Positions 51,738 through 64,000 of a DNA stretch of 64,000 nt are shown here, one piece after another. Source of the stretch: Syncephalis fuscata S228 (lineage: Eukaryota > Fungi > Zoopagomycota); NCBI GenBank assembly GCA_025786725.1, contig JAHLTZ010000028.1:306833-370832 (forward strand), in the 5' to 3' direction. Below the pieces are notes generated by a model. The model saw only the letters and a program-made list of their open reading frames with translations, was not told the origin of the DNA and did not search any database. The first letter of the stretch is position 1, and every line of letters begins with the position of its first letter. The position numbers were made by a program, and so were the translations under genes.

Positions 51738-54664
51738 ATTATAATTTTTGCCACTATTGATATTATTCATAATGTATTACTACTACTACTACTACTACTA
51801 CTACTCTTATCAATGTTGATATTGATACTTGCTGCAAAAAATAAGCAAGTAAAGCTAACAATCTATTCTTTTGAAAGCGTTGATTGCTACTTAATATAAT
51901 ATATTTCTTTTAATTTTGTAAATTTTAACAGTATTCAGAAATATTTAACTATATTTTTACATTGATTTATCAACAGCAATAGTTATTAAGGCATCAAATT
52001 TAATAAACACTCTTTATGTTGTAACAAATAGAAACTTAATAACTGTCGTTTTGTTTACGCTCACTTCTAGCACATAAGCGTTAGTGGCTACTAATTAAAT
52101 GTTTACCTTAACATAACACGAATCTGATGTTATTATAAAATAAAAAAATAAATGATTCTCCTTTTAATTATCGATTACTGCAGTTAAACTTTTAATAACA
52201 AATAACATTTTTAACTAAAGCAGAAAAAAGAATATAGAACTAGGGATGTTGATATGTTTATTATCATTCCAATAAAGCTAATATTTTATAGTAAACACCA
52301 TTGTTAATAAAACTTGAGCCTTGTTCATATGATTAATCATATGTCAATAAATAACAGGTATTTACTGATTATGTTCTTGGATGGATGTTTGTTTGCGATT
52401 GTTAGTACTAGCATTTAGTATGTTGTTGTTGTGAATATTCACATGGTGGACGTCATGTATAAATCGCGTGATAGATAATCGCGTGACTAAAATACCGTAA
52501 CTCGGTATCATAACAATGTTGCAAATAGAAACGACAATATTATCATAAAAATAGTATTTTCAAGCATTTCTTTAGTTGTTAGCACTTTCCCGTTTTTTCA
52601 AAAATATATAATTTATATGTGTCGATGCGTCAAGACTATGCGGTCATATAAATGGCATTACGTATTTATAAATACATTATTAATAAAATTAAAAACCAGT
52701 GAAAAATTTTAATTAATCAAAAAAGACTGTAACAGTTCCGTTTGCCATTTGATAATATAAGCCTACACAAATACTAATTAGAAAATGTATAATAAATTAA
52801 TTAACTATAATTAATAAACAGTCAATTAAAGTTTGCAATAATATGTATCATTTATCTCTGTTACCTAACTAGTCTTATTATTATTATGGTTGGTCTATAA
52901 TAATTATTAGTATGCGACCATACATTGCAATATTGATATTATTCAATACACAATGACTATTGACACGTGTTCTCATTACAATTAATAACAACCATAATAC
53001 TATTTATTGCATATTTATATCGATAGTATTGATTAATAATATTGCATGTACACTGACGCACATTTCAACAACTGTGTTGCTGTATGTTGCTTGACTATAT
53101 ACTTTGTAATACTACATCCAACATGTACAACCTATTAGCATATTAGCATTAGTTATCATCAATGTAGGCTGGCTGTTACCGATAATGTTGTAAGTATACT
53201 AGGCAGCAGTTTCTATATTCTTATTTATTACTAATGAGTGCTAGTGTTGTTGTTGCTATGTATCACTAGATGCGTATGTATATAAATATCAACTGTCTGA
53301 TATGGCGTTTATATTGTAATATTGACAACAACGCTAGTAGTGATTACTAAGCCAATGTGGTTAGCAATATAGTACGTCAGATAGCTATCGGTGTGCATGC
53401 ATGTACCACTGTTGACTACAGCTGGCAAGACATGCAAATTGTATAAACATAGTTAGTACACATCTGCACTATGTCTAATGAAACCAACTTTGTCTTCAGT
53501 TGCCGATACTGTTGATAACAACTATCTAACAGCAGACACTGACTTATACATTAATTGCTTACAATAATGCATATGTTTATTGATTGTATAACAATTGATG
53601 CATCAATAGCTAGTATATACTGGTGTATACTGTTACCAAAAATGCTAATATTAGTGTCATGTTAATTAGCAAATAAATCGGTACATTATTAATATGGTAT
53701 TTTGCTAATGCCAGGCAATAAGTCAGTCCATTGTTAAGTGTGATTAGCTGTGTTATATATACAGCAATTATTGTGTATATTGCTTTATCGGTGCATATGT
53801 GCCAACATTTGGAAAGCACATAGTTGGGTGTCACTATAAACACGCCATTGTGTATCATTTATTAAAGACTTTTGCTTTTATATTTATAATAAAAACTATG
53901 TTTTATTATTCTGTACGGGCATACTCTCTACACACATGTATTATTCTCATTGCATATCTATGCCATTTTATATTAATCTTTAATATATTAAATGCATTCC
54001 AGTCATTCCATTCGTTATATATTTTCACAAGTTTATAAACTAGTACAATACAATAATTATGTATTGCAATATGCTACAAACACATACTAATACATAATAC
54101 TATTGTGTGTTGTACCCGCCACTTATATAGTTAAATTAAAATAAGATAAAAAATAAAGGTTTGCTGAGTTTTATTTATAGATCTATACAACTCACTATAT
54201 GGTTATCAATATATTTTAAATCATTATACTTTCGAATCCACACAATTAATATTATCTAATTCTAACACTATTACACATAAACAGATTTACTAATGTTTAT
54301 TATGTTTATGACATCAATAAATACTTTACAAGAATCTATCACAACTTTACAAATACTTACTAATTAGTTTACTTTCTTCCCTCCTCTATAGCCAACATTG
54401 CTATAAATACAATAGTAATTACTTACATCAAATTAAAATTATCCTCTTATCAAACATTCATTTATCTTCATTGTTATACTCTAACCCAGCCATAACAGTT
54501 ATACCTCTACATAATACTATACAATTGTGTAGTTTATATATCCTAAATTTTAAATGTAGTATACAGCAATATATACCCGCTGATGAATATACAAGTGTAC
54601 ACACAATGTTAACGGTTGAAAGTTGCTATAATCACGCAATAGCTAACAAATTAATGTTTATTGC

Positions 54665-55340
54665 TTAAATAATAATTAATTGTTAACCAGTAATCATTAT
54701 TAATTAACTAACTAGCAGATTGACTAATACAGTTGGCTATTACTACTAACTAACTACATCAGTTAATTAACTAGTGTTAGACAACGATGGTTATAGGTAA
54801 ACTAATTGACAAGTGGTAAATAGCAGCCATTATTAACTAATTGATTAACCGTTAAATAACAATCGTTATTAACTTAATTAGCTAAACCGATTAACTGATC
54901 ATTAACTAACTAGTTGATTGACTAATATTAGCTGGCTATTACCATTAGCTAACTAATGTTAATTGACTAACATTAGCTGGTTATTACTATTGATTAACTA
55001 GGCCAACTAATTAACTAGTGTTAGACAACAATTATTAATAATTATTAAGCACCAATCATTATTTATTAATTAACTAAATATTAACTAATATTAAATAAAT
55101 TATTATTAACTAATTAATTAATTATTAACTGGATTATTAATTAACACGATTTTACTTAATTTTTTAGTCTATATTCTATTGCTAAATGGCAAGGATACTC
55201 TTACATTTTTAGTTAATTATTACTTAATTTTTACTTAACTTTAGTTAGCTTTAATTAAGTAATTGGCTAATAATTAGTTAGTTAATTAACTAATGGTAAC
55301 GATAACCGTTTAACAACTTAGTTAACTTGTTAATTATTTA
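54665..55340. repeat. AT-rich TTAA/ACTAA low-complexity leader of the satellite
   Basis: Recurrent attaactaactag...gattgactaatattagctggctattac modules (~54703, 54901, ~54961); the same leader reappears at 63265-63560. Confidence 0.8.
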
Positions 55341-58300
55341 ACCAATTACTTAACTTTTAATTAACTTTTAGTCTATTTTTATTAACAAAATGGCAAGGAT
55401 ACCCTTACATTTCTAGTTAATTATTACTTAACTTTTTACTTAACTTTAGTTAACTTTTAATTAACTTTTTTAGCCGTATATTTGGTCGATTTTTGTTGGA
55501 TTTTTGTCGGATTTTTTTGGGAAAAACGGCCCAACTCCCCGTATTTTTAATTCCACGGATACTTGTCCTAAAAATACACGGTGCCACTTGTTCGAACCGC
55601 AAAAGCAGGCGTGTCGATCCTGATATGCTAAATAATCGCCAAAAATCGTGGGAATGCGTGAAAAATACGCGGAGTTGGACCTCCATACAAAAAACGGCAC
55701 TTTTTGCATGTTTTGATTTTTAATTCATTGGATAAATTTTTGGCGATTTTTTCGAATATATAGATCGACGCACTATATCATTGCGGTCAGAACAGTGGTT
55801 GTGTATTTTTAAGCAATTATCCGTAGAGTTAAAAATACGGGGAGTTTGATGACTAGTTTATAGTGGCATATTTCACGAATCCTAAGGATATCCCCTATAA
55901 CCAGCAAACTAGAACTCCCCGTATTTTTAACTCTACGGATAATTGATCTAAAAATACACAGGACCACTCGTTCGGACCGCAATGACATGGTGCGTCGATC
56001 CTGATATTCAAAAAAATCACCAAAAATTTATCCAATAATTAAAAATCAAAACATGCAAAAAGTGCCGTTTTTTGTATGGAGGTCCAACTCCGCGTATTTT
56101 TCATGCATTCCCACGATTTTTGGCGATTTTTAGCATATCAGGATCGACGCGCCTGCTTCTTGCGGTTGAACAAGTGGCACTGTGTATTTTTAGGTCAAGT
56201 ATCCGTGGAATTAAAAATACGGGGAGTTGGGCCGTTTTTCCCAAAAAAATCCGACAAAAATCCAACAAAAATCGACCAAATATACGGCTAAAAAAGTTAA
56301 TTAAAAGTTAACTAAAGTTAAGTAAAAAGTTAAGTAATATTTGACTAGAAATGTAAGGGTATCCTTGCCATTTTGTTAATAAATATAGACTAAAAGTTAA
56401 CTAAAGTTAAGTAATTAGTTAAGTAATTAACAAGTTAACTAAGTTGTTAAACGGTTATCATTACCATTAGTTAATTACTTAACTACATTAACTATTACTT
56501 AACTTTTAGTTAACTTTTAGTCTATATTTTATTCAAAATAGCAAGGATACCCTTACATTTCTAGTCAAATATTACTTAACTTTTTACTTAACTTTAGTTA
56601 ACTTTTAATTAACTTTTTTAGCCGTATATTTGGTCGATTTTTGTTGGATTTTTGTTGGATTTTTTGGGAAAAACGGCCCAACTCCCCGTATTTTTAATTC
56701 CACGGATACTTGTCCTAAAAATACACGGTGCCACTTGTTCGAACCGCAAGAAGCAGGCGCGTCGATCCTGATATGCTAAATAATCGCCAAAAATCGTGGG
56801 AATGCGTGAAAAATACGCGGAGTTGGACCTCCATACAAAAAACGGCACTTTTTGCATGTTTTGATTTTTAATTCATTGGATAAATTTTTGGCGATTTTTT
56901 CGAATATATAGATCGACGCACCATATTATTGCGGTCGAACGAGTGGTCCTGTGTATTTTTAGAGCAATTATCCGTAGAGTTAAAAATACGGGGAGTTTGA
57001 TGACTAGTTTATAGTGGCATATTTCACGAATCCTAAGATATCCCCTATAACCAGCAACTAGAACTCCCCGTATTTTTAACTCTACGGATAATTGCTCTAA
57101 AAATACACAGGACCACTCGTTCGACCGCAATGATATGGTGCGTCGATCTATATATTGAAAAAATCGCCAAAAATTTATCCAATGAATTAAAAATCAAAAC
57201 ATGCAAAAAGTGCCGTTTTTTGTATGGAGGTCCAACTCCGCGTATTTTTCACGCATTCCCACGATTTTTGGCGATTTTTTAGCATATCAGGATCGACGCG
57301 CCTGCTTCTTGCGGTTCGAACAAGTGGCACCGTGTATTTTTAGGACAAGTATCCGTGGAATTAAAAATACGGGGAGTTGGGCCGTTTTTCCCAAAAAAAT
57401 CCGACAAAAATCCAACAAAAATCGACCAAATATACGGCTAAAAAAGTTAATTAAAAGTTAACTAAAGTTAAGTAAAAAGTTAAGTAATATTTGACTAAAA
57501 TGTAAGGGATCCCTTGCTATTTTGACTATAAAATATAGACTAAAAGTTAACTAAAAGTTAAGTAATAGTTAATGTTAGTTAAGTAATTAACTAATGGTAA
57601 TGATAACCGTTTAACAACTTAGTTAACTTGTTAATTACTTAACTAATTACTTAACTTTAGTTAACTTTTAGTCTATATTTATTAACAAAATAGCAAGGAT
57701 ACCCTTACATTTCTAGTCAAATATTACTTAACTTTTTACTTAACTTTAGTTAACTTTTAATTAACTTTTTTAGCCGTATATTTGGTCGATTTTTGTTGGA
57801 TTTTTGTTGGATTTTTTGGGAAAAACGGCCCAACTCCCCGTATTTTTAATTCCACGGATACTTGTCCTAAAAATACACGGTGCCACTTGTTCGAACCGCA
57901 AGAAGCAGGCGCGTCGATCCTGATATGCTAAAAATCGCCAAAAATCGTGGGAATGCGTGAAAAATACGCGGAGTTGGACCTCCATACAAAAAACGACACT
58001 TTTTGCATGTTTTGATTTTTAATTCATTGGATAAATTTTTGGCGATTTTTTCGAATATATAGATCGACGCACCATATTATTGCGGTCAGAACGAGTGGTC
58101 CTGTGTATTTTTAGATCAATTATCCGTAGAGTTAAAAATACGGGGAGTTTAGTTTGCTGGTTATAGGGGATATCTTAGGATTTCGTGAAATATGCCACTA
58201 TAAACTAGTCATCAAACTCCGTATTTTTAACTCTACGGATAATTGCTCTAAAAATACACAGGACCACTCGTTCGACCGCAATGATATGGTGCGTCGATCT

Positions 58301-58730
58301 ATATATTCGAAAAAATCGCCAAAAATTTATCCAATGAATTAAAAATCAAAACATGCAAAAAGTGCCGTTTTTTGTATGGAGGTCCAACTCCGCGTATTTT
58401 TCACGCATTCCCACGATTTTTGGCGATTTTTAGCATATCAGGATCGACGCGCCTGCTTCTTGCGGTTCGAACAAGTGGCACCGTGTATTTTTAGGACAAG
58501 TATCCGTGGAATTAAAAATACGGGGAGTTGGGCCGTTTTTCCAAAAAAATCCGACAAAAATCCAACAAAAATCGACCAAATATACGGCTAAAAAAGTTAA
58601 TTAAAAGTTAACTAAAGTTAAGTAAAAAGTTAAGTAATATTTGACTAAAATGTAAGGGTATCCTTGCTATTTTGTATAAAATATAGACTAAAAGTTAACT
58701 AAAGTTAAGTAATAGTTAAGTAATTAAAGT
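55340..58730. repeat. Nested inverted-repeat satellite forming a ~3.4-kb palindrome centred near 57030
   Basis: Six ~500-bp arms in alternating orientation separated by ~65-bp cores (55847-55912, 56998-57061, 58150-58214) and 40-bp AT spacers (56431-56470, 57591-57630); period ~1150 bp. Confidence 0.95.
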
Positions 58731-58928
58731 TAATAATTGTTAGCTTAATTAGTTATTATATTATTGCCTGTTGACAAAACTTTTTATTCTCGAAATGTAG
58801 GTGATGTTACTAATTGCACTTAAATGGATATTAGGCTACTAGGGCCAAAGAGGAAAGAAAGGTAGAAATAAAGGAGAAAAGTTTCAGAACGTTCCAAACA
58901 ACAGGCACCAGGGTCAGTGGCTGGGTGG

Positions 58929-59060
58929 GTGGAGGGACGAAGCAACTTAAAATAAAGGAGAAAAGTAGTGGAATCCGATGAATTGGATTCCTCGGCTTCC
59001 TTTATAGTTGTTTTGTCCCGACAATAAAGCGCTATTTAAAATTTTTAAATAGCCGCATTA
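58929..59060 (-). repeat. Direct repeat A2 of the retrotransposon
   Basis: gtggagggacgaagc...aatagccgcatta, identical by eye to 63137-63268; its first three bases on the minus strand are the YR stop codon. Confidence 0.95.
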
Positions 59061-62015
59061 TTGCCTTATGTCTGGAGTAGACTGTTGCATGAAATCAAAC
59101 AGGGCAAAGTCGAAAGGTTGGGCTACATACTCCATTCGTATGTACCTTTGCATTGACGTCAAACTCGACCATATGCCTTGATACATTATCTTCGCGCTGC
59201 TGATACCAATGCTGTGGGTGGCGGACGCAAACGTGCGTCGTACGCTATGCGATGTTAATGTCTTAACCACCGCTGCTGGGGCACCCGCAGTCTTCATTAC
59301 CCGTTGTAATACTTGCGTGACGGTATAATGGCTCTGAAATATAGCCTTTTCAGTAAAAGGCGGGCTCCATATTGTTTCTGTATTACTACTAATAAATTGT
59401 GTTGATTCCAAATAACGTCTGATGAGTGGTCCAACTATTGTGCGTGTTAAATCGATTGCAAGAATACGTCCTGCCTCATGCTTATGTCGTTTCGCGCCGT
59501 TAATTGTGATGGTAAGCATTGTATTCGTTACTTGTAAATCGGTCTTTTCTATCTTGAGTAGAGAAGAGGCACGCAGGCCGCATAACACGCCTATCAGAAT
59601 GATGTTTAAGTCGCGTAATGCCACCTCGTCGGTCAACAAGCCATCATTCGATACGTAAGGAGCCAACCAGGAGGAAGGAAAAAATGAATTACTTTTTGAT
59701 ACGGTTGGATTTTCAGCAAAAGTCCAAGCTGCGTACCCTTTGGATAATTGTGTGAGTAGTGTTGATTCAACTTCAGGGAAGCCGAGGTGATTATTAATTG
59801 ATCGTAACGCCGACATCCGTGCTTGTATAGTTGCAGGTGCCAACGCGCGTAAACTGGATGCGGCCATATAAACGGCCATCGCACCAATTTTTAGTGGAAA
59901 AGGGTGTTGCCCATACTCACGACAGAAACGCGCGTAACTGGAAACGTGGGAGCTATAAGTATTCCACGACGCTTCCGTATATTGTTTGTCGAGTAATTGG
60001 AACAAACGCTGTTGTTGTTCTGGATCTAAATTGACGGGCAACTGTAGTTGCTCCGCCCAGGCGCGTGATAGCTGCGTGCGCAAATACGAGCTCCGTCCAT
60101 GCGCGCCACCAAGATCTTCCAACTCGGATTGATCGCCGGTTCTGGAATGACGTCCGACCTTGTCATTACATTCGCCCAAACCCGAACGGAATCTACTGGC
60201 AACACGGCGGTTGTTATCAACTGCACGAGAGGCCACCACGGCTGGCTGGTCCAACGAGGCAAGATGACGGTAGCTTGCGCGCGATCTCGTATTAACTTGG
60301 TTAAGATTACGCCCATAAGGCCGAAAGGGGGATTGATAAAATTGTTTTCTCCCCGCCACGTAACCGACAGGGCATCTACCCCCTCGCACCCATCGTCTGC
60401 GTTGAGTGAATTGTAACGCGGTAGCAATGCGTTCCAGCCCGCCGCGAAACGATCTATGGTATGAGGGCCGAATGCTTCTTCTATCTCTTGGAACATAGGT
60501 GCCGGTAGTTGCCAATCGGACTTTTGGACGATTCGCGACAGGAAATCCGCCGCCACGTTGTATCGACCGGGTAAGTACTTGATTAGCCCCATCAAATGTA
60601 TTTCTTCTTGCTGACAGAGATTCCAAACCCGACGAACGATCGCGTGCAAAGAAGCGCTGGACGAGGCGAAAGCATTGAGCGCGCCGAGAGAAGCTTGGGC
60701 GTCCATCATGGCCTGCACCACCGATTGACGAATGATCGTCTGGAAGTTTTTTACTGCGTATAGCAATCCCAACGCCTCTCTGTGCACTATGTGCAACTCT
60801 TTCTCTTCCGCCCCCCACTGTCCGTAAGCCAATCTCTCTTCTCCTTGCCCGTCCACGATTGTTGCCCCCCATCCCTCGTCTGATGCATCCGTAGTAATAA
60901 CGTAGTCGGGCGGACGCTGAATGATCGACGCGGCAGGCTGATTGCTCACGATTTTCAAAATTCGCCTCATCTCTCTGACGCTTGCATTGCTGACCTTGAT
61001 CCGGGCTTGCCAATCCCCTCTCTTTTTCAGATCGTTGTATAATGCTCTTAGGTGCAACATTATATACGGGATTGCATGCCTCGCCGCGATCACCACCCCC
61101 GTCACTTGCGCCACCTCCCGCGCCACCACCATCCTGGCTTTCTTCGCGCACATCTTTAAAACTCCTAGCAAGGTAAGCTTTATTTTCTCCCGATATGAAT
61201 CTGTCAGTTGAAATTCCATTGCGCGCAGATCTATACGGTAACCAAGATGATCTATTACCTGAGTCGGCTCCCACACACATTTCGTCGGATGTGGCTGTAA
61301 TCCTAAACTTCTTAACAGCAATTGCGTCTTGAGCGGCCATTCCTGAGCCATTTGCACGTGATTGAGCAGAATCAGAAAGTCGTCTAGGTACGCCAGACAA
61401 CGCAATCCTTGCTCGCGCAAATATTGCACCATGGGCCGCATTGTCTTGACGAAGAAATACGGGGACAGACTCCACCCGAACGGGAGGGATTGGTACTGGT
61501 AATACCGACCTAGTATTTCCGTTTGAAAATACTTTTGCTGATTGGGACGTAGGCCCACCGCCAGATAACCATCCTTCAGATCGAAGGCTATGGCGCGGTC
61601 TTCCGGTTGAGCCAAGTACTTGAGCACTCTTAAGTCTTCGTAACGCATCGGCGATTCTGAACAGTGTTGGTTTAGATGTCGCAGGTCGATTATTAGGCGG
61701 TATCCCTGCGGCTTGCGAGGGATGATAAACGACGGCGACACGTGAATGGCTTGGCTGGCCGGGATTTCGATTATGGCACCGGCCTGCAATAATCGATGAA
61801 CTTCCTGCTGTAAGAACAGGACCTCCGCAGGATCGCGGGTCTGGTAGGATCGATAGCGGAACGGAGCAGGAGGCCCTTGCGCGCCCCATGGTACCGCTAC
61901 GCCATGCCGGATCCACTTCATCACTCTTCGACTTGCCCCTATAGAATGCCACCTTTTCCAGGCCGATCTTACACGTAAATGCAGGGGCTGATCGACCGGA
62001 GGTGGCCGGTAGGAT
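59058..62015 (-). CDS. Long open frame ending in a tyrosine recombinase (YR region ~59058-60000)
   Basis: Catalytic set CGLRAS (R), GAKRHK (K), SHSVRR (HxxR), QGIWSS (W), MQRY (Y) plus an N-terminal SAM-like region. Frame is open from the gag stop; first ATG at 61889; real start unknown. Confidence 0.88.
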   Translation of the reverse strand: MLPATSGRSAPAFTCKIGLEKVAFYRGKSKSDEVDPAWRSGTMGRARASCSVPLSILPDPRSCGGPVLTAGSSSIIAGRCHNRNPGQPSHSRVAVVYHPSQAAGIPPNNRPATSKPTLFRIADALRRLKSAQVLGSTGRPRHSLRSEGWLSGGGPTSQSAKVFSNGNTRSVLPVPIPPVRVESVPVFLRQDNAAHGAIFARARIALSGVPRRLSDSAQSRANGSGMAAQDAIAVKKFRITATSDEMCVGADSGNRSSWLPYRSARNGISTDRFISGENKAYLARSFKDVREESQDGGGAGGGASDGGGDRGEACNPVYNVAPKSIIQRSEKERGLASPDQGQQCKRQRDEANFENREQSACRVDHSASARLRYYYGCIRRGMGGNNRGRARRREIGLRTVGGGRERVAHSAQRGVGIAIRSKKLPDDHSSIGGAGHDGRPSFSRRAQCFRLVQRFFARDRSSGLESLSARRNTFDGANQVLTRSIQRGGGFPVANRPKVRLATTGTYVPRDRRSIRPSYHRSFRGGLERIATALQFTQRRRWVRGGRCPVGYVAGRKQFYQSPFRPYGRNLNQVNTRSRASYRHLASLDQPAVVASRAVDNNRRVASRFRSGLGECNDKVGRHSRTGDQSELEDLGGAHGRSSYLRTQLSRAWAEQLQLPVNLDPEQQQRLFQLLDKQYTEASWNTYSSHVSSYARFCREYGQHPFPLKIGAMAVYMAASSLRALAPATIQARMSALRSINNHLGFPEVESTLLTQLSKGYAAWTFAENPTVSKSNSFFPSSWLAPYVSNDGLLTDEVALRDLNIILIGVLCGLRASSLLKIEKTDLQVTNTMLTITINGAKRHKHEAGRILAIDLTRTIVGPLIRRYLESTQFISSNTETIWSPPFTEKAIFQSHYTVTQVLQRVMKTAGAPAAVVKTLTSHSVRRTFASATHSIGISSAKIMYQGIWSSLTSMQRYIRMEYVAQPFDFALFDFMQQSTPDIRQ

Positions 62016-62023
62016 TCAGGCAT
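60026..62023 (-). CDS. Reverse transcriptase - RNase H - N6-adenine methyltransferase-like polyprotein
   Basis: YRLIIDLRHLN, FDLKDGY, LPFGWSLSP, YLDD (61390-61379), RNase H TTDASDEGWGA and HIVHREAL, MT IDRFA...VDAL...NPPF (60334-60323)...PRWTSQPWW. Confidence 0.95.
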   Translation of the reverse strand: MPESYRPPPVDQPLHLRVRSAWKRWHSIGASRRVMKWIRHGVAVPWGAQGPPAPFRYRSYQTRDPAEVLFLQQEVHRLLQAGAIIEIPASQAIHVSPSFIIPRKPQGYRLIIDLRHLNQHCSESPMRYEDLRVLKYLAQPEDRAIAFDLKDGYLAVGLRPNQQKYFQTEILGRYYQYQSLPFGWSLSPYFFVKTMRPMVQYLREQGLRCLAYLDDFLILLNHVQMAQEWPLKTQLLLRSLGLQPHPTKCVWEPTQVIDHLGYRIDLRAMEFQLTDSYREKIKLTLLGVLKMCAKKARMVVAREVAQVTGVVIAARHAIPYIMLHLRALYNDLKKRGDWQARIKVSNASVREMRRILKIVSNQPAASIIQRPPDYVITTDASDEGWGATIVDGQGEERLAYGQWGAEEKELHIVHREALGLLYAVKNFQTIIRQSVVQAMMDAQASLGALNAFASSSASLHAIVRRVWNLCQQEEIHLMGLIKYLPGRYNVAADFLSRIVQKSDWQLPAPMFQEIEEAFGPHTIDRFAAGWNALLPRYNSLNADDGCEGVDALSVTWRGENNFINPPFGLMGVILTKLIRDRAQATVILPRWTSQPWWPLVQLITTAVLPVDSVRVWANVMTRSDVIPEPAINPSWKILVARMDGARICARSYHAPGRSNYSCPSI

Positions 62024-63044
62024 TTCCGGCCCCGCCCGCCGGACCACCACCGCGCTGTGGCGGGGCGGATTTCTTGGGGTCGGTGGCCGTCGTGCCTTTA
62101 CCAAGCTTGGTGGTGGAATGACTTAAACTTTTGAAAGTTTGCGCTGTCTCTGTCTTCCGTTTGGCCCGCAAAATCTCGGATTGGATGTTGCTGGTGTATC
62201 GGGTCATGCCAACCGTATCCATACGCGATTCCACCTGGCGGATGGCCTCATCACTCAATTCAGACCTGGCCCGGACCATTGAATAACGAGTTAATATAGT
62301 CCGTTCCAATACTTGCAACACGCAGGCTAACACCGTATACGCGGATGTACCCTCACGCATGTCCACATTCCACAATGACAAGGCTTGGATAGTCTTTACC
62401 AGGTAAAGCACCATGGATAACACAGCACGTCCTTCCCTTTGCCCTTCACCGGTAAGCTTGTTGAAGACGTCGTCTTGAATAGTGTTGAGATTTTGTGGTT
62501 TAGGATCCATGTAATTAACGATGGGAATAAAACCCACGAACGGCATGAATAAATCTTCCGTTTGGGCAAATTCAGAAGGCGATTCGTTAAAACGGGTTCC
62601 TCTAAGCAATAACTCCACGAAATCAGGTGAATTGGGATCCAACTCTTCCGGCAAATCCGTGTATTCAACATCCGTTCGCGCCACCCGGACCCGCGGATCC
62701 TCTCCTTCCGATTCCTCGTCTGGTTCCCTAGGGTCCCCGTCGTTTTGCGTCGAACGACCCGTACCAAGTCGTTTGGTGGCGATGATATGTCGCATGCGAT
62801 TCACGTCCTGCCGAGCAGTGGCGTTATGGCCGGATGCTTCGACCAGTTGATTTGCACCTGCCCTCGGCTCTTCCAACAGATGACCAGGCGTGTCAGTCTG
62901 ATCATGGTCTTCAACGGGGCGGTTCGATCCGATCTTCATGGCTTGGGCAAGCTGGGTAACAATGGCAGCCAAATCCTCCTCGTGCAGGCGTACCACTGAT
63001 GACTCAGGTTCCTCTGAACCACTCTGGCTCTGATCTTCAGACAT
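62016..63044 (-). CDS. ORF1, gag-like protein of the retrotransposon
   Basis: 342-aa ATG-initiated ORF just inside repeat A1 and upstream of RT; assignment is positional, no zinc knuckle seen. Confidence 0.8.
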   Translation of the reverse strand: MSEDQSQSGSEEPESSVVRLHEEDLAAIVTQLAQAMKIGSNRPVEDHDQTDTPGHLLEEPRAGANQLVEASGHNATARQDVNRMRHIIATKRLGTGRSTQNDGDPREPDEESEGEDPRVRVARTDVEYTDLPEELDPNSPDFVELLLRGTRFNESPSEFAQTEDLFMPFVGFIPIVNYMDPKPQNLNTIQDDVFNKLTGEGQREGRAVLSMVLYLVKTIQALSLWNVDMREGTSAYTVLACVLQVLERTILTRYSMVRARSELSDEAIRQVESRMDTVGMTRYTSNIQSEILRAKRKTETAQTFKSLSHSTTKLGKGTTATDPKKSAPPQRGGGPAGGAGNA

Positions 63045-63136
63045 GTTTAAAGATAGTATATCTTATTTGTAAATAACAAGAATAAAAACCTTTGACTTTG
63101 CTTAATCAAATATGAACGCTTTATTTTGAGTGCTTT

Positions 63137-63268
63137 GTGGAGGGACGAAGCAACTTAAAATAAAGGAGAAAAGTAGTGGAATCCGATGAATTGGATTCCT
63201 CGGCTTCCTTTATAGTTGTTTTGTCCCGACAATAAAGCGCTATTTAAAATTTTTAAATAGCCGCATTA
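63137..63268 (-). repeat. Direct repeat A1 (5' end of the retrotransposon)
   Basis: 132 bp identical to 58929-59060. Confidence 0.95.
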
Positions 63269-64000
63269 ACTAACTAGTTGATTGACTAATATTAGCTGGC
63301 TATTACTATTGCTTTGACTAATTAACTAATTGACAAGTATTAAACACCAAGCATTATTAACTAACTATTAAACATCAATCATTATTTATTAATTAACTAG
63401 CTATTAACTAATAGCAAATAAATTATTATTGACTAATTAATTAACTATTAACTGGATTATTAATTAACACAGTTTAACTTTATAGTCTATATTCTATTAT
63501 TAAATAACAAGGGATACCCTTACATTTTTAGTTAATTACTGATTGACTAATTACTTAACTTTAGTCTATTTTTATTAACAAAATGGCAAGGGATACTCTT
63601 GCACTTTTAATTAACTTTTAGTCTATTTTTATTAACAAAATAGCAAGGATACCCTTATATTTCTAGTCAAATATTACTTAACTTTTTACTTAACTTTAGT
63701 TAACTTTAATTAACTTTTTTAGCCGTATATTTGGTCGATTTTTGTTGGATTTTTGTCGGTTTTTTTGGGAAAAACGGCCCAACTCCCGTATTTTTAATTC
63801 CACGGATACTTGTCCTAAAAATACACGGTGCCACTTGTTCGAACCGCAAGAAGCAGGCGCGTCGATCCTGATATGCTAAATAATCGCCAAAAATCGTGGG
63901 AATGCGTGAAAAATACGTGGAGTTGGACCTCCATACAAAAAACGGCACTTTTTGCATGTTTTGATTTTTAATTCATTGGATAAATTTTTGGCGATTTTTT
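63269..64000. repeat. Next satellite unit: AT-rich leader plus first arm, truncated by the window end
   Basis: 63265-63560 parallels ~54901-55230; 63610-64000 parallels ~55360-55750. Confidence 0.93.

What the first reader, a model, noticed from the sequence alone, without database searches (positions are those of the whole stretch)
55340..58730. 3.4-kb palindrome built from palindromes within palindromes
Seen: three ~1.15-kb units, each an inverted pair of ~500-bp arms around a ~65-bp asymmetric core, joined by 40-bp asymmetric AT spacers. Orientations are core1 forward, spacer1 reverse, core2 forward, spacer2 forward, core3 reverse, so the block is mirror-symmetric about core2 (~57030) and is not a simple tandem array. 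A private variant is mirrored too (aattgatcta at 55941-55950 vs ttagatcaat at 58111-58120; most other arms have ttgctcta/tagagcaa). Each arm holds two diverged ~130-bp subunits in inverted orientation (aactccccgtatttttaattccacggatac... vs aactccccgtatttttaactctacggataa...), giving three nested levels of dyad symmetry. Inference: growth by repeated fold-back/inverted duplication, with high cruciform and hairpin-RNA potential.
Basis: seen in the sequence. Interest (0 to 1): 0.8.

Follow-up and report, generated by a model that had tools for sequence, protein, structure and literature searches.

The report
Palindromic-monomer satellite with flipping loops
The 3.4-kb "palindrome of palindromes" is real, but it is the first three units of a genome-wide satellite repeat whose 1.15-kb unit is a long hairpin-capable palindrome with two small loops that flip freely, so the large mirror pattern seen here is most likely incidental.

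Summary
Window 55358-58727 holds three ~1150-bp units, each made of arm, 65-bp core, inverted arm and a spacer. Each arm also contains an older internal palindrome.

The block is not a unique 3.4-kb fold-back. The same unit forms arrays of 2-6 assembled units on 10 contigs of this 29-Mb genome, mostly at contig ends, and the window itself ends in a second array. Across 28 cores and 23 spacers both orientations are common, and core and spacer orientation are independent. The window's mirror pattern is therefore one of many patterns, with a chance of roughly 1 in 4.

Arm divergence does not favour the mirror partners: 14-20 differences against 5-8 for other pairs. Genome-wide, hairpin partners, direct pairs and inverted pairs within a locus all differ by about 2.2%. 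Arms at array edges are the most diverged, which is classic satellite homogenisation.

A DIRS/PAT-like tyrosine-recombinase retrotransposon sits beside the array. All three of its copies lie in satellite leader or spacer DNA, at an ATTA.

Best reading: a lineage-specific satellite in a probable zoopagalean-like fungus, with loops inverted by recombination between the arms. A centromeric or heterochromatic role is possible but untested. Earlier scan notes on this same stretch proposed similar ideas. Interest is moderate.

The parts
54170..54645 (+). Conserved ~0.5-kb junction box found beside the arrays on other contigs
   Evidence: It matches at 82-84% next to the arrays on C320 (both sides, inverted), C102, C24, C173 and C325, and at 89-90% on C311 and C334. 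On C320 the two boxes bracket a 4-unit array as an 83.5% inverted repeat.
54646..55357 (+). AT-rich TTAAC/TTAACTAA-type leader between the box and the array; includes the boundary spacer copy at 55283-55350 (-)
   Evidence: GC is 0.26-0.30. Direct repeat families D6, D9, D10 and D12 lie here. The boundary spacer is mapped.
55358..55847 (+). Arm 1L (edge arm, the most diverged of the six)
   Evidence: 20-25 differences from every other arm.
55848..55912 (+). Core 1, forward
55913..56402 (-). Arm 1R (inverted copy)
56410..56480 (+). Spacer 1 (orientation-informative segment; asymmetric centre about 56432-56468)
56488..56998 (+). Arm 2L
56999..57061 (+). Core 2, forward
   Evidence: Folded alone it is not significantly structured (z -0.76).
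57062..57575 (-). Arm 2R
   Evidence: Inverted pair I4 is 100% complementary over 242 nt.
57581..57651 (-). Spacer 2, reverse relative to spacer 1
   Evidence: inverted pair I3 is 98% complementary.
57659..58149 (+). Arm 3L
58150..58213 (-). Core 3, reverse
58214..58727 (-). Arm 3R plus a truncated boundary spacer (58698-58727, +)
58757..63273 (-). DIRS/PAT-like tyrosine-recombinase retrotransposon inserted at the array border. It carries a gag-like ORF (63044-62016), an RT-RNaseH-MT ORF (62104-60026) and an overlapping YR ORF ending at 59058. It has 127-bp direct repeats at about 58931-59057 and 63147-63273.
   Evidence: Pfam gives Phage_integrase at 6.1e-11, and RVT_1 at 5.3e-17, RT_RNaseH at 1.7e-06 and Dam at 2.8e-08. 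There are three ~100% identical copies, all in satellite leader or spacer DNA.
63274..63635 (+). Second, partial leader in direct orientation
   Evidence: It is 81.6-100% identical to 54900-55267.
63636..64000 (+). Start of a second array (arm), cut by the contig end
   Evidence: It is 98.4% identical to arm positions 1-367. The window end is the end of contig C201.

Best explanation
The block is the first three monomers of an array of a lineage-specific satellite DNA family. The ~1.15-kb monomer is itself a long palindrome: two ~0.5-kb arms in inverted orientation, separated on one side by a conserved 65-bp asymmetric core and on the other by a spacer with a ~35-40-nt asymmetric centre.

Arrays grow, shrink and stay homogeneous through ordinary unequal exchange and gene conversion among units, within and between loci.

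Every core and every spacer lies between inverted arms that are 98% alike. Recombination between those arms therefore inverts the loops one at a time, or in odd-numbered runs. This randomises their orientation, and the mirror pattern in this window is one such outcome.

The older levels of symmetry are fossils of earlier inverted duplications that built the monomer. These are the 70%-alike subunits inside each arm and the 16-18-bp motif that occurs in alternating orientation.

Shown here: the anatomy, the genome-wide family, free loop orientation, the homogenisation pattern and the hairpin potential. Inferred: recombination as the flipping mechanism, and a heterochromatic, possibly (peri)centromeric, setting.
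For: Period and arms:
- Periods are 1148-1152 bp and arms are 95-100% complementary.
- The same unit occurs on 10 contigs, mostly at contig ends.
- The window ends in a second array at the contig end.

Loop orientation:
- 28 cores split 12 forward to 16 reverse; 23 spacers split 8 to 15.
- The core and spacer orientations seen by the same arm are independent (counts 16/13/11/10).
- Other arrays are not mirror-symmetric.

Arm divergence over 61 arms:
- Hairpin partners 2.19%.
- Direct pairs in the same locus 2.18%.
- Inverted non-adjacent pairs 2.18%.
- Spacer partners 1.85%.
- Between loci 2.88%.
- Edge arms are 3-4% from their nearest relative.

Near-identical versions of one locus:
- C320, C102, C24 and C173 share flanks at 97.4-98.8% over 7-16 kb.
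- They differ in unit number and in loop orientation next to the flank.

Family confined to arrays:
- The motif AACTCCSCGTATTTTTMA occurs 143 times. Every one of the ~100 places listed lies in an array-bearing contig (43 further places were not listed). The control pattern gave 0 hits.

Depth and outside support:
- Logan contigs of runs X1 and X2 give summed depth of 10^3-10^4 on the repeat, against about 8-12 on the flank and the DIRS element.
- A soil-metagenome run from another study holds arm-core and arm-spacer-arm fragments.

Precedent:
- Orientation polymorphism of DNA between inverted repeats, caused by recombination in the repeats, is documented for K. phaffii and S. pombe centromeres (PMC5010909).
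Against: - No read spanning a whole unit or array was available, so unit counts and some loop orientations rest on the assembly. The K. phaffii paper notes that assemblies can get such orientations wrong.
- Some cores on the small contigs carry many 1-bp indels, or look partly symmetrised. These could be consensus artefacts from mixed flip and flop reads.
- Depth in X1-X4 may be distorted by library type. Those runs yield only ~5 Mb of contigs each and may be the source of the assembly.
- The flipping mechanism itself was not observed.
Confidence: 0.75

Rival explanations
1. One reading: the 3.4-kb block is a discrete three-level palindrome produced by successive fold-back (inverted) duplications, the last one mirroring the block about core 2.
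For: - The orientation pattern in the window is fully mirror-symmetric.
- One variant (alignment column 484) is shared only by the mirror partners 1R and 3L.
- The lower levels are plausibly old inverted duplications.
Against: - Mirror partners differ at 14-20 sites, while non-mirror pairs differ at 5-8.
- Other variants (columns 174 and 446) are shared by direct pairs.
- Other arrays show non-mirrored patterns.
- The outer spacers are fixed by the leader, so the chance of the observed pattern is about 0.25.
- Genome-wide, hairpin partners are no closer than any other pair in the same locus.
Confidence: 0.08
2. Mobile-element origin: the array with its leaders and inverted 0.5-kb boxes is a foldback-type composite transposon, or the units are tandemly captured foldback elements or MITEs that spread between loci by transposition.
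For: - On C320 a complete 4-unit array is bracketed by an inverted 0.5-kb box.
- The box and leader recur at several loci with sharp homology boundaries.
- The ~148-nt subunit starts and ends with a 16-18-bp inverted motif, as a MITE would.
Against: - No solo or dispersed units or motifs were seen outside the arrays.
- Spacers between units are conserved sequence, not variable target DNA.
- The homology boundaries of the flanks fall into three nested classes rather than one defined terminus.
- No transposase-like ORF lies in the arms.
- The subunit fold is not significant on its own (z -1.65).
Confidence: 0.1
3. Integrated or amplified concatemers of a small hairpin-ended (dumbbell) replicon copied by rolling-hairpin replication. 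That process naturally gives head-to-head and tail-to-tail units with flip/flop loops.
For: - Arms alternate strictly, with two kinds of loop, each found in both orientations and independently of each other.
- Depth in two runs is very high.
- The full unit folds as one ~575-bp hairpin.
Against: - No Rep, nickase or resolvase-like coding capacity is present.
- No match was found in viral or metagenome contig collections.
- The arrays are embedded in chromosomal contigs with conserved flanks.
- Edge units are more diverged, as in chromosomal satellites.
Confidence: 0.04
4. Assembly or amplification artefact: inverted chimeras from amplified DNA, or unsplit long-read hairpin reads, created the palindromes.
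For: - Earlier scan notes (unchecked) list many palindromes in this genome.
- The assembly carries near-duplicate contigs and homopolymer indels.
- The DIRS copies are ~100% identical over 4.5 kb, and the two flanks of the window copy do not match one continuous target, so a mis-join there is possible.
Against: - Arms differ by 1-5%, with consistent cores and spacers in about 30 units on 10 contigs. Artefactual fold-backs would have identical arms and random breakpoints.
- Short contigs from a soil metagenome in a separate study contain the arm-core and arm-spacer-arm junctions.
Confidence: 0.03

Closest known systems
Tribolium brevicornis TBREV satellite (1061-bp monomer built of two ~470-bp inversely oriented subunits; Mravinac et al. 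2005, pmid 15883886, cited in PMC13081366; the monomer and subunit sizes are from my own recollection of that paper, not from the cited text) and the macro-dyad satellite arrays of T. madens, T. freemani and T. castaneum (PMC13081366)
   Same: Both are tandem satellites in which long inverted subunits inside or between monomers give hairpin or cruciform potential over hundreds of base pairs to kilobases. Both have conserved sequences at the inversion points and homogenised repeats.
   Different: - There is no sequence relationship, and the host here is a fungus-like genome of 29 Mb rather than a beetle.
- Here every monomer carries two short asymmetric loops that occur in either orientation, independently of each other.
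- The Tribolium macro-dyads are orientation switches of whole subarrays at fixed inversion sites.
- The assembled copy number is small (about 30-35 units), and the true abundance is unknown.
Inverted-repeat regional centromeres of Komagataella phaffii, Candida tropicalis and Schizosaccharomyces pombe (PMC5010909)
   Same: In both, a segment flanked by near-identical inverted repeats has an orientation that is polymorphic through recombination in the repeats. The C320 locus also has an array bracketed by an inverted 0.5-kb box in gene-poor, AT-rich DNA.
   Different: - Those centromeres have one unique mid region of 1-10 kb per chromosome, with CenH3 shown by ChIP.
- Here the invertible pieces are 65-bp and ~40-nt loops repeated in tandem.
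- No chromatin data exist and one locus per chromosome is not shown.
DIRS-1 clusters at Dictyostelium centromeres, and PAT-like or Kangaroo-type YR retrotransposons (own knowledge: Poulter and Goodwin 2005 review)
   Same: The neighbouring element has gag, RT-RNaseH-MT and a tyrosine recombinase. Its copies sit preferentially in one kind of repeat-rich, gene-poor DNA.
   Different: - This applies to the neighbour, not to the palindromic repeat itself.
- The termini are a 127-bp direct repeat plus only a ~10-bp second repeat, not the classic inverted terminal repeats with an internal complementary region, nor long split direct repeats.
Drosophila Foldback (FB) elements
   Same: Both have long inverted arms built from internal repeats and strong snap-back behaviour.
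   Different: FB elements are dispersed, flanked by target duplications, and their arms are made of short tandem subrepeats. Here the units are found only in tandem arrays, joined by a conserved spacer.

Membership tests
Satellite DNA with complex palindromic monomer (TBREV type) | Head-to-tail tandem arrays of a monomer of fixed length | tested here: met
   Spacing is 1148-1152 bp. Arrays of 2-6 units lie on 10 contigs.
Satellite DNA with complex palindromic monomer (TBREV type) | Monomer made of two long inversely oriented subunits separated by non-homologous segments | tested here: met
   Arms are ~465-510 bp and 95-100% complementary. A 65-bp core and a spacer separate them. The unit fold has dG -653 kcal/mol.
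Satellite DNA with complex palindromic monomer (TBREV type) | Concerted evolution: units homogenised across arrays, edge units more diverged | tested here: met
   Divergence is 2.2% within loci and 2.9% between loci. Edge arms are 3-4% from their nearest relative.
Satellite DNA with complex palindromic monomer (TBREV type) | High copy number | tested here: inconclusive
   About 30-35 units are assembled (143 motif hits), and the arrays break contigs. Summed contig depth is 10^2-10^3 times that of the neighbours, but this is not a copy number and the library type is unknown.
Satellite DNA with complex palindromic monomer (TBREV type) | Heterochromatic or (peri)centromeric location | not testable with these tools
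   No ChIP, Hi-C or cytology is available. The only indication is a gene-poor, AT-rich context.
Foldback transposon / MITE | Solo copies dispersed at unrelated sites | tested here: not met
   Every listed match of the unit and of its 18-nt motif lies in an array-bearing contig. Some matches were not listed by the tools.
Foldback transposon / MITE | Variable target DNA and target-site duplications between copies | tested here: not met
   Units are joined by a conserved spacer, whose 71-nt segment is 76-100% identical between units.
Inverted-repeat regional centromere | Central region bracketed by inverted repeats | tested here: met
   On C320 the boxes at 831-1311 and 7273-6780 of L021 are 83.5% identical over 497 bp, in inverted orientation around 4 units.
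Inverted-repeat regional centromere | One locus per chromosome | tested here: inconclusive
   Ten contigs carry arrays, but four of them are near-identical versions of one locus. That leaves about 4-6 independent loci, and the chromosome number is unknown.
Inverted-repeat regional centromere | CenH3 occupancy or centromere function | not testable with these tools
   No such data could be reached.
DIRS-order YR retrotransposon (the neighbouring element) | RT and RNase H together with a tyrosine recombinase instead of a DDE integrase | tested here: met
   RVT_1 5.3e-17, RT_RNaseH 1.7e-06, Phage_integrase 6.1e-11.
DIRS-order YR retrotransposon (the neighbouring element) | Methyltransferase-like domain (DIRS1 and PAT groups) | tested here: met
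   PF05869 Dam, 34 bits against a cut-off of 28.1.
DIRS-order YR retrotransposon (the neighbouring element) | Inverted terminal repeats with an internal complementary region, or split direct repeats A1..B1A2..B2 | tested here: inconclusive
   There is a 127-bp direct repeat at one end and 174 bp from the other end. The second repeat is only ~10 bp, so that GCCGC-ATTA-TTGCC inside the element equals the predicted circle junction.
Rolling-hairpin replicon concatemer | Alternating head-to-head and tail-to-tail units with flip/flop termini | tested here: met
Rolling-hairpin replicon concatemer | Associated Rep, nickase or resolvase, or free monomer molecules | tested here: not met
   No protein family was found in the arm ORFs. 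No viral or metagenome relatives were found. Free molecules cannot be tested with these tools.

The most novel reading that the evidence does not exclude
The palindromic-monomer arrays, bracketed by inverted boxes in AT-rich gene deserts and preferentially hit by a DIRS-like YR retroelement, are the centromeres (or the centromere-defining DNA) of an early-diverging, zoopagalean-like fungus. Cruciform-capable monomers and freely inverting loops would be part of how the locus is recognised or maintained.
Probability: 0.22. Interest if true: 0.75.

Novelty: new variant of a known kind. Interest (0 to 1): 0.45.

Why it matters
- Satellites whose monomer is a kilobase-scale palindrome were, in what I found, documented mainly in Tribolium beetles. 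I found no report from fungi.
- This family combines such a monomer with two independently invertible loops per unit. That makes it a compact natural system for studying how long palindromes are tolerated, homogenised and rearranged.
- If the arrays prove centromeric, they would give the first sequence-level picture I am aware of for centromeres in Zoopagomycota-like fungi. They would also add a case to the idea that non-B-form DNA marks centromeres (PMC5889037).
- Practically, the family explains several contig breaks and likely mis-joins in this assembly.

Tried and rejected
- Rfam at gathering thresholds found nothing in the window. At relaxed thresholds it gave only sub-threshold miRNA-precursor matches centred on cores 2 and 3, which are generic hairpin matches.
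- No tRNA genes are present.
- Pfam found no family in the five longest arm ORFs.
- Two exact-pattern scans of metagenome contigs and one of viral contigs found nothing.
- I looked for evidence that the arrays are subtelomeric. A (TTAGGG)4 pattern is absent from the genome. No telomere-like repeats lie in the fetched flanks or at 20 contig starts. The organism's telomere motif was not identified, so this stays open. The C320/C24 locus has at least 94 kb on one side and at least 720 kb on the other.
- The association between arm variants and the side of the core they adjoin is weak. The best site has p = 0.0009 among 76 tests, near the core. No variant is associated with the spacer side.
- Direct proof of a core flip between allelic contigs was ambiguous at the one discordant core (forward score 29, reverse 35), because both copies are degraded.
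- The organism could not be named. A literature search on the micro-exon genes mentioned in other scan notes found nothing. The best named relative of a window gene is from Syncephalis plumigaleata at 61% identity.
- Read laying was given 5,501 letters.
Full report
SETTING

The window is the last 64 kb of contig C201 of a 29.4-Mb, 371-contig assembly, so the window end is the contig end. It has no tRNA or Rfam genes and few long ORFs. It is about 36% G+C, with an AT-rich, ORF-poor stretch from about 51.7 kb onward. One window gene, a LYC1-type GNAT, has as its best named relative a Syncephalis plumigaleata protein at 61% identity. The organism is therefore probably a zoopagalean-like early-diverging fungus. 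That is an inference, not an identification.

Repeat finding gives direct periods of 1148-1152 bp and inverted arms of 242-377 nt at 95-100% complementarity.

The cores map at 55848-55912 (+), 56999-57061 (+) and 58150-58213 (-). The spacer segments map at 55283-55350 (-), 56410-56480 (+), 57581-57651 (-), with a truncated one at 58698-58727 (+).

Only about 35-40 nt in the middle of each ~150-bp segment between arms is asymmetric; the rest is palindromic (z -10.5). The core alone is not significantly structured (z -0.76). It has a weak inner dyad around a ~15-nt asymmetric centre.

Inside each arm, positions 147-464 match their own reverse complement at ~70% and fold as one imperfect hairpin (z -13.95). 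A 16-18-bp motif, AACTCC[C/G]CGTATTTTT, recurs six times per unit in alternating orientation. A unit taken from mid-spacer to mid-spacer (1170 nt) folds into a single ~575-bp stem with dG -653 kcal/mol.

IT IS A GENOME-WIDE FAMILY, NOT A SINGLE PALINDROME

The unit matches at 93-98% in arrays of 2-6 assembled units on C102, C34, C24, C325, C344, C173, C311, C320 and C334, and twice on C201. Eight of these arrays run into a contig end. The 18-nt motif occurs 143 times, with 0 hits for the control pattern. Every place the tool listed lies in an array-bearing contig. The assembly therefore holds about 30-35 units, and no dispersed solo copies were seen.

In Logan contigs of two runs labelled with the same organism, summed depth on the repeat is 10^3-10^4. 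The adjacent flank and the three-copy DIRS element show about 8-26. This suggests the arrays are much longer than assembled. It is not a copy number, and those runs may be the source of the assembly.

A soil-metagenome run from a different study contains short contigs at 90-99% identity that cross arm-core and arm-spacer-arm junctions. This gives independent support that the unit structure is natural.

LOOP ORIENTATIONS ARE FREE

In all arrays the arms alternate strictly, but the cores (12 forward, 16 reverse) and the spacers (8 forward, 15 reverse) point either way. The core and spacer orientations seen from the same arm are independent (counts 16/13/11/10). Other arrays are not mirror-symmetric, and two of them are symmetric in the opposite sense. 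The outermost spacers always have the same orientation relative to the flanking leader. In the window, therefore, only two pairs of loops were free, and a full mirror pattern has a chance of about 1 in 4.

ARM SEQUENCES DO NOT SUPPORT A TOP-LEVEL FOLD-BACK

In the window the mirror partners differ at 20 sites (1L/3R) and 14 sites (1R/3L). By contrast 2L/3L and 2L/3R differ at 5 sites each, 2L/2R at 7 and 3L/3R at 8.

Mean divergence over the 61 arms is as follows:
- Hairpin partners: 2.19%.
- Direct pairs in a locus: 2.18%.
- Inverted non-adjacent pairs: 2.18%.
- Spacer partners: 1.85%.
- Between loci: 2.88%.
- Arms at array edges: 3-4% from their nearest relative.

This is the signature of satellite homogenisation by unequal exchange and conversion. 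It is not the signature of recent hairpin-templated duplication. Arm variants are only weakly associated with the side of the core they adjoin, and mostly close to the core. That fits crossovers spread along the arms.

LOCUS ARCHITECTURE

Each array is entered through an AT-rich leader rich in TTAAC (window 54646-55357), preceded by a ~0.5-kb box (54170-54645) that recurs beside the arrays elsewhere.

On C320 a complete 4-unit array is bracketed by the box in inverted orientation (83.5% over 497 bp).

C320, C102, C24 and C173 share the same right flank at 97.4-98.8% over 7-16 kb. They are haplotigs or very recent duplicates of one locus. They differ in unit number (4 against at least 5.5) and in the orientation of the loops nearest the flank. 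This suggests that length change and flipping are fast. One discordant core is too degraded to call, and the small contigs carry many homopolymer indels.

After collapsing these near-duplicates, about 4-6 independent loci remain. The C320/C24 locus is chromosome-internal, with at least 94 kb on one side and at least 720 kb on the other.

THE NEIGHBOURING ELEMENT

Window 58757-63273 (minus strand, 53% G+C) is a DIRS-order retrotransposon. It has a gag-like ORF, an RT-RNaseH-Dam-like MT ORF and an overlapping tyrosine-recombinase ORF. It carries a 127-bp direct repeat at one end and again 174 bp from the other end.

Three ~100% identical full copies exist, on C201, C344 and C34. All lie in satellite leader or spacer DNA, with ATTA at both junctions. 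The window's second leader carries the uninterrupted target (…AACT-ATTA-ACTGG…) of the C344 copy. Inside the element, the sequence GCCGC-ATTA-TTGCC equals the predicted circle junction.

The two flanks of the window copy do not form one continuous target. On its left is the end of an array; on its right is a leader in direct orientation followed by a second array. The cause could be recombination between DIRS copies or an assembly join through the identical 4.5 kb.

In a probable RNA run the element reaches depth ~2500, while the satellite is at ~3.

MECHANISM

Committed reading: this is a satellite whose monomer is a long palindrome. Arrays are homogenised by unequal exchange and conversion. 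The two loops per monomer are inverted by recombination between the flanking inverted arms. The same process makes the regions between centromeric inverted repeats orientation-polymorphic in K. phaffii and S. pombe (PMC5010909).

The lower symmetry levels record older inverted duplications.

A role as heterochromatic, possibly (peri)centromeric, DNA rests on four points:
- The gene-poor, AT-rich setting.
- The inverted boxes.
- The repeat-targeting YR element.
- The general link between dyad-rich satellites and centromeres (PMC5889037, PMC13081366).

No chromatin data could be reached. I put the centromeric reading at about 0.2-0.3.

COMPARISON WITH WHAT IS KNOWN

The nearest described things are the Tribolium brevicornis satellite, with two long inversely oriented subunits per monomer (which I recall as a 1061-bp monomer with ~470-bp subunits), and the macro-dyad satellite arrays of other Tribolium species (PMC13081366). 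This family shares the principle but not the sequence, the host group or the per-monomer invertible loops.

It fails the tests for a foldback transposon: no dispersed copies were seen, and the spacers are conserved rather than variable target DNA. For a hairpin replicon, no replication gene or relatives were found. I file it as a new variant of a known kind (a satellite with a palindromic complex monomer), of moderate interest.

EARLIER SCAN NOTES

Earlier notes on this same stretch (s1-624904, s1-625273, s1-625158, s1-624998) had proposed the centromere idea, the 16-bp motif, the ATTA insertion and the unusual termini. I checked the last three directly, and they hold.

LIMITS

Only contigs of at most ~2 kb were served.
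- Read laying was given 5,501 letters.

Noticed in passing
window 58757-63273 (-); L027 (C344:44464-48976); L012 2474-6910 (C34): A DIRS/PAT-like YR retrotransposon (gag-like ORF, RT-RNaseH-Dam-like MT, tyrosine recombinase) is present in three ~100% identical copies. All lie in satellite leader or spacer DNA with ATTA at both junctions. The window's second leader provides the empty site for the C344 copy. An internal GCCGC-ATTA-TTGCC equals the predicted circle junction.
   Followed up: partly
window 58728-58756 and 63274-63635: The left and right flanks of the window's DIRS copy do not belong to one continuous target. On the left is the end of an array plus 29 bp of unmatched AT-rich DNA. 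On the right is a leader in direct orientation leading into a second array. The cause could be recombination between DIRS copies or an assembly mis-join through the identical 4.5-kb element.
   Followed up: partly
window 52012-52445: A ~430-bp dispersed repeat has at least 30 copies at 77-82% identity on many contigs, often clustered (for example C2:223-249 kb and C112:882-887 kb). It is probably a SINE- or MITE-like element or a short tandem family.
   Followed up: no
C102, C173, C24:1-10000, C320:94-110 kb (L011, L016, L013, L021, L022, L025): Four contigs carry the same locus at 97.4-98.8% identity over 7-16 kb. The assembly therefore contains haplotigs or very recent duplicates. The small contigs show many 1-bp homopolymer indels.
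   Followed up: partly
C311:148112-148430, C334:62963-63273, C34:10953-11262: At the outer end of the 2.1-kb flank shared with window 52550-54648, about 310 bp is repeated in inverted orientation immediately alongside. The flank ends in a small palindrome at three loci.
   Followed up: no
window 58882-59300 in run X5: A 2210-nt contig of a probable RNA run covers the 3' part of the DIRS element at depth ~2500. The element appears to be strongly expressed.
   Followed up: no
run X9: A 2019 run with the same species label (33 Mb of contigs) holds almost none of the sampled words of 53800-59300. The satellite may be absent or very different in another isolate, or the run may be of another kind.
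   Followed up: no
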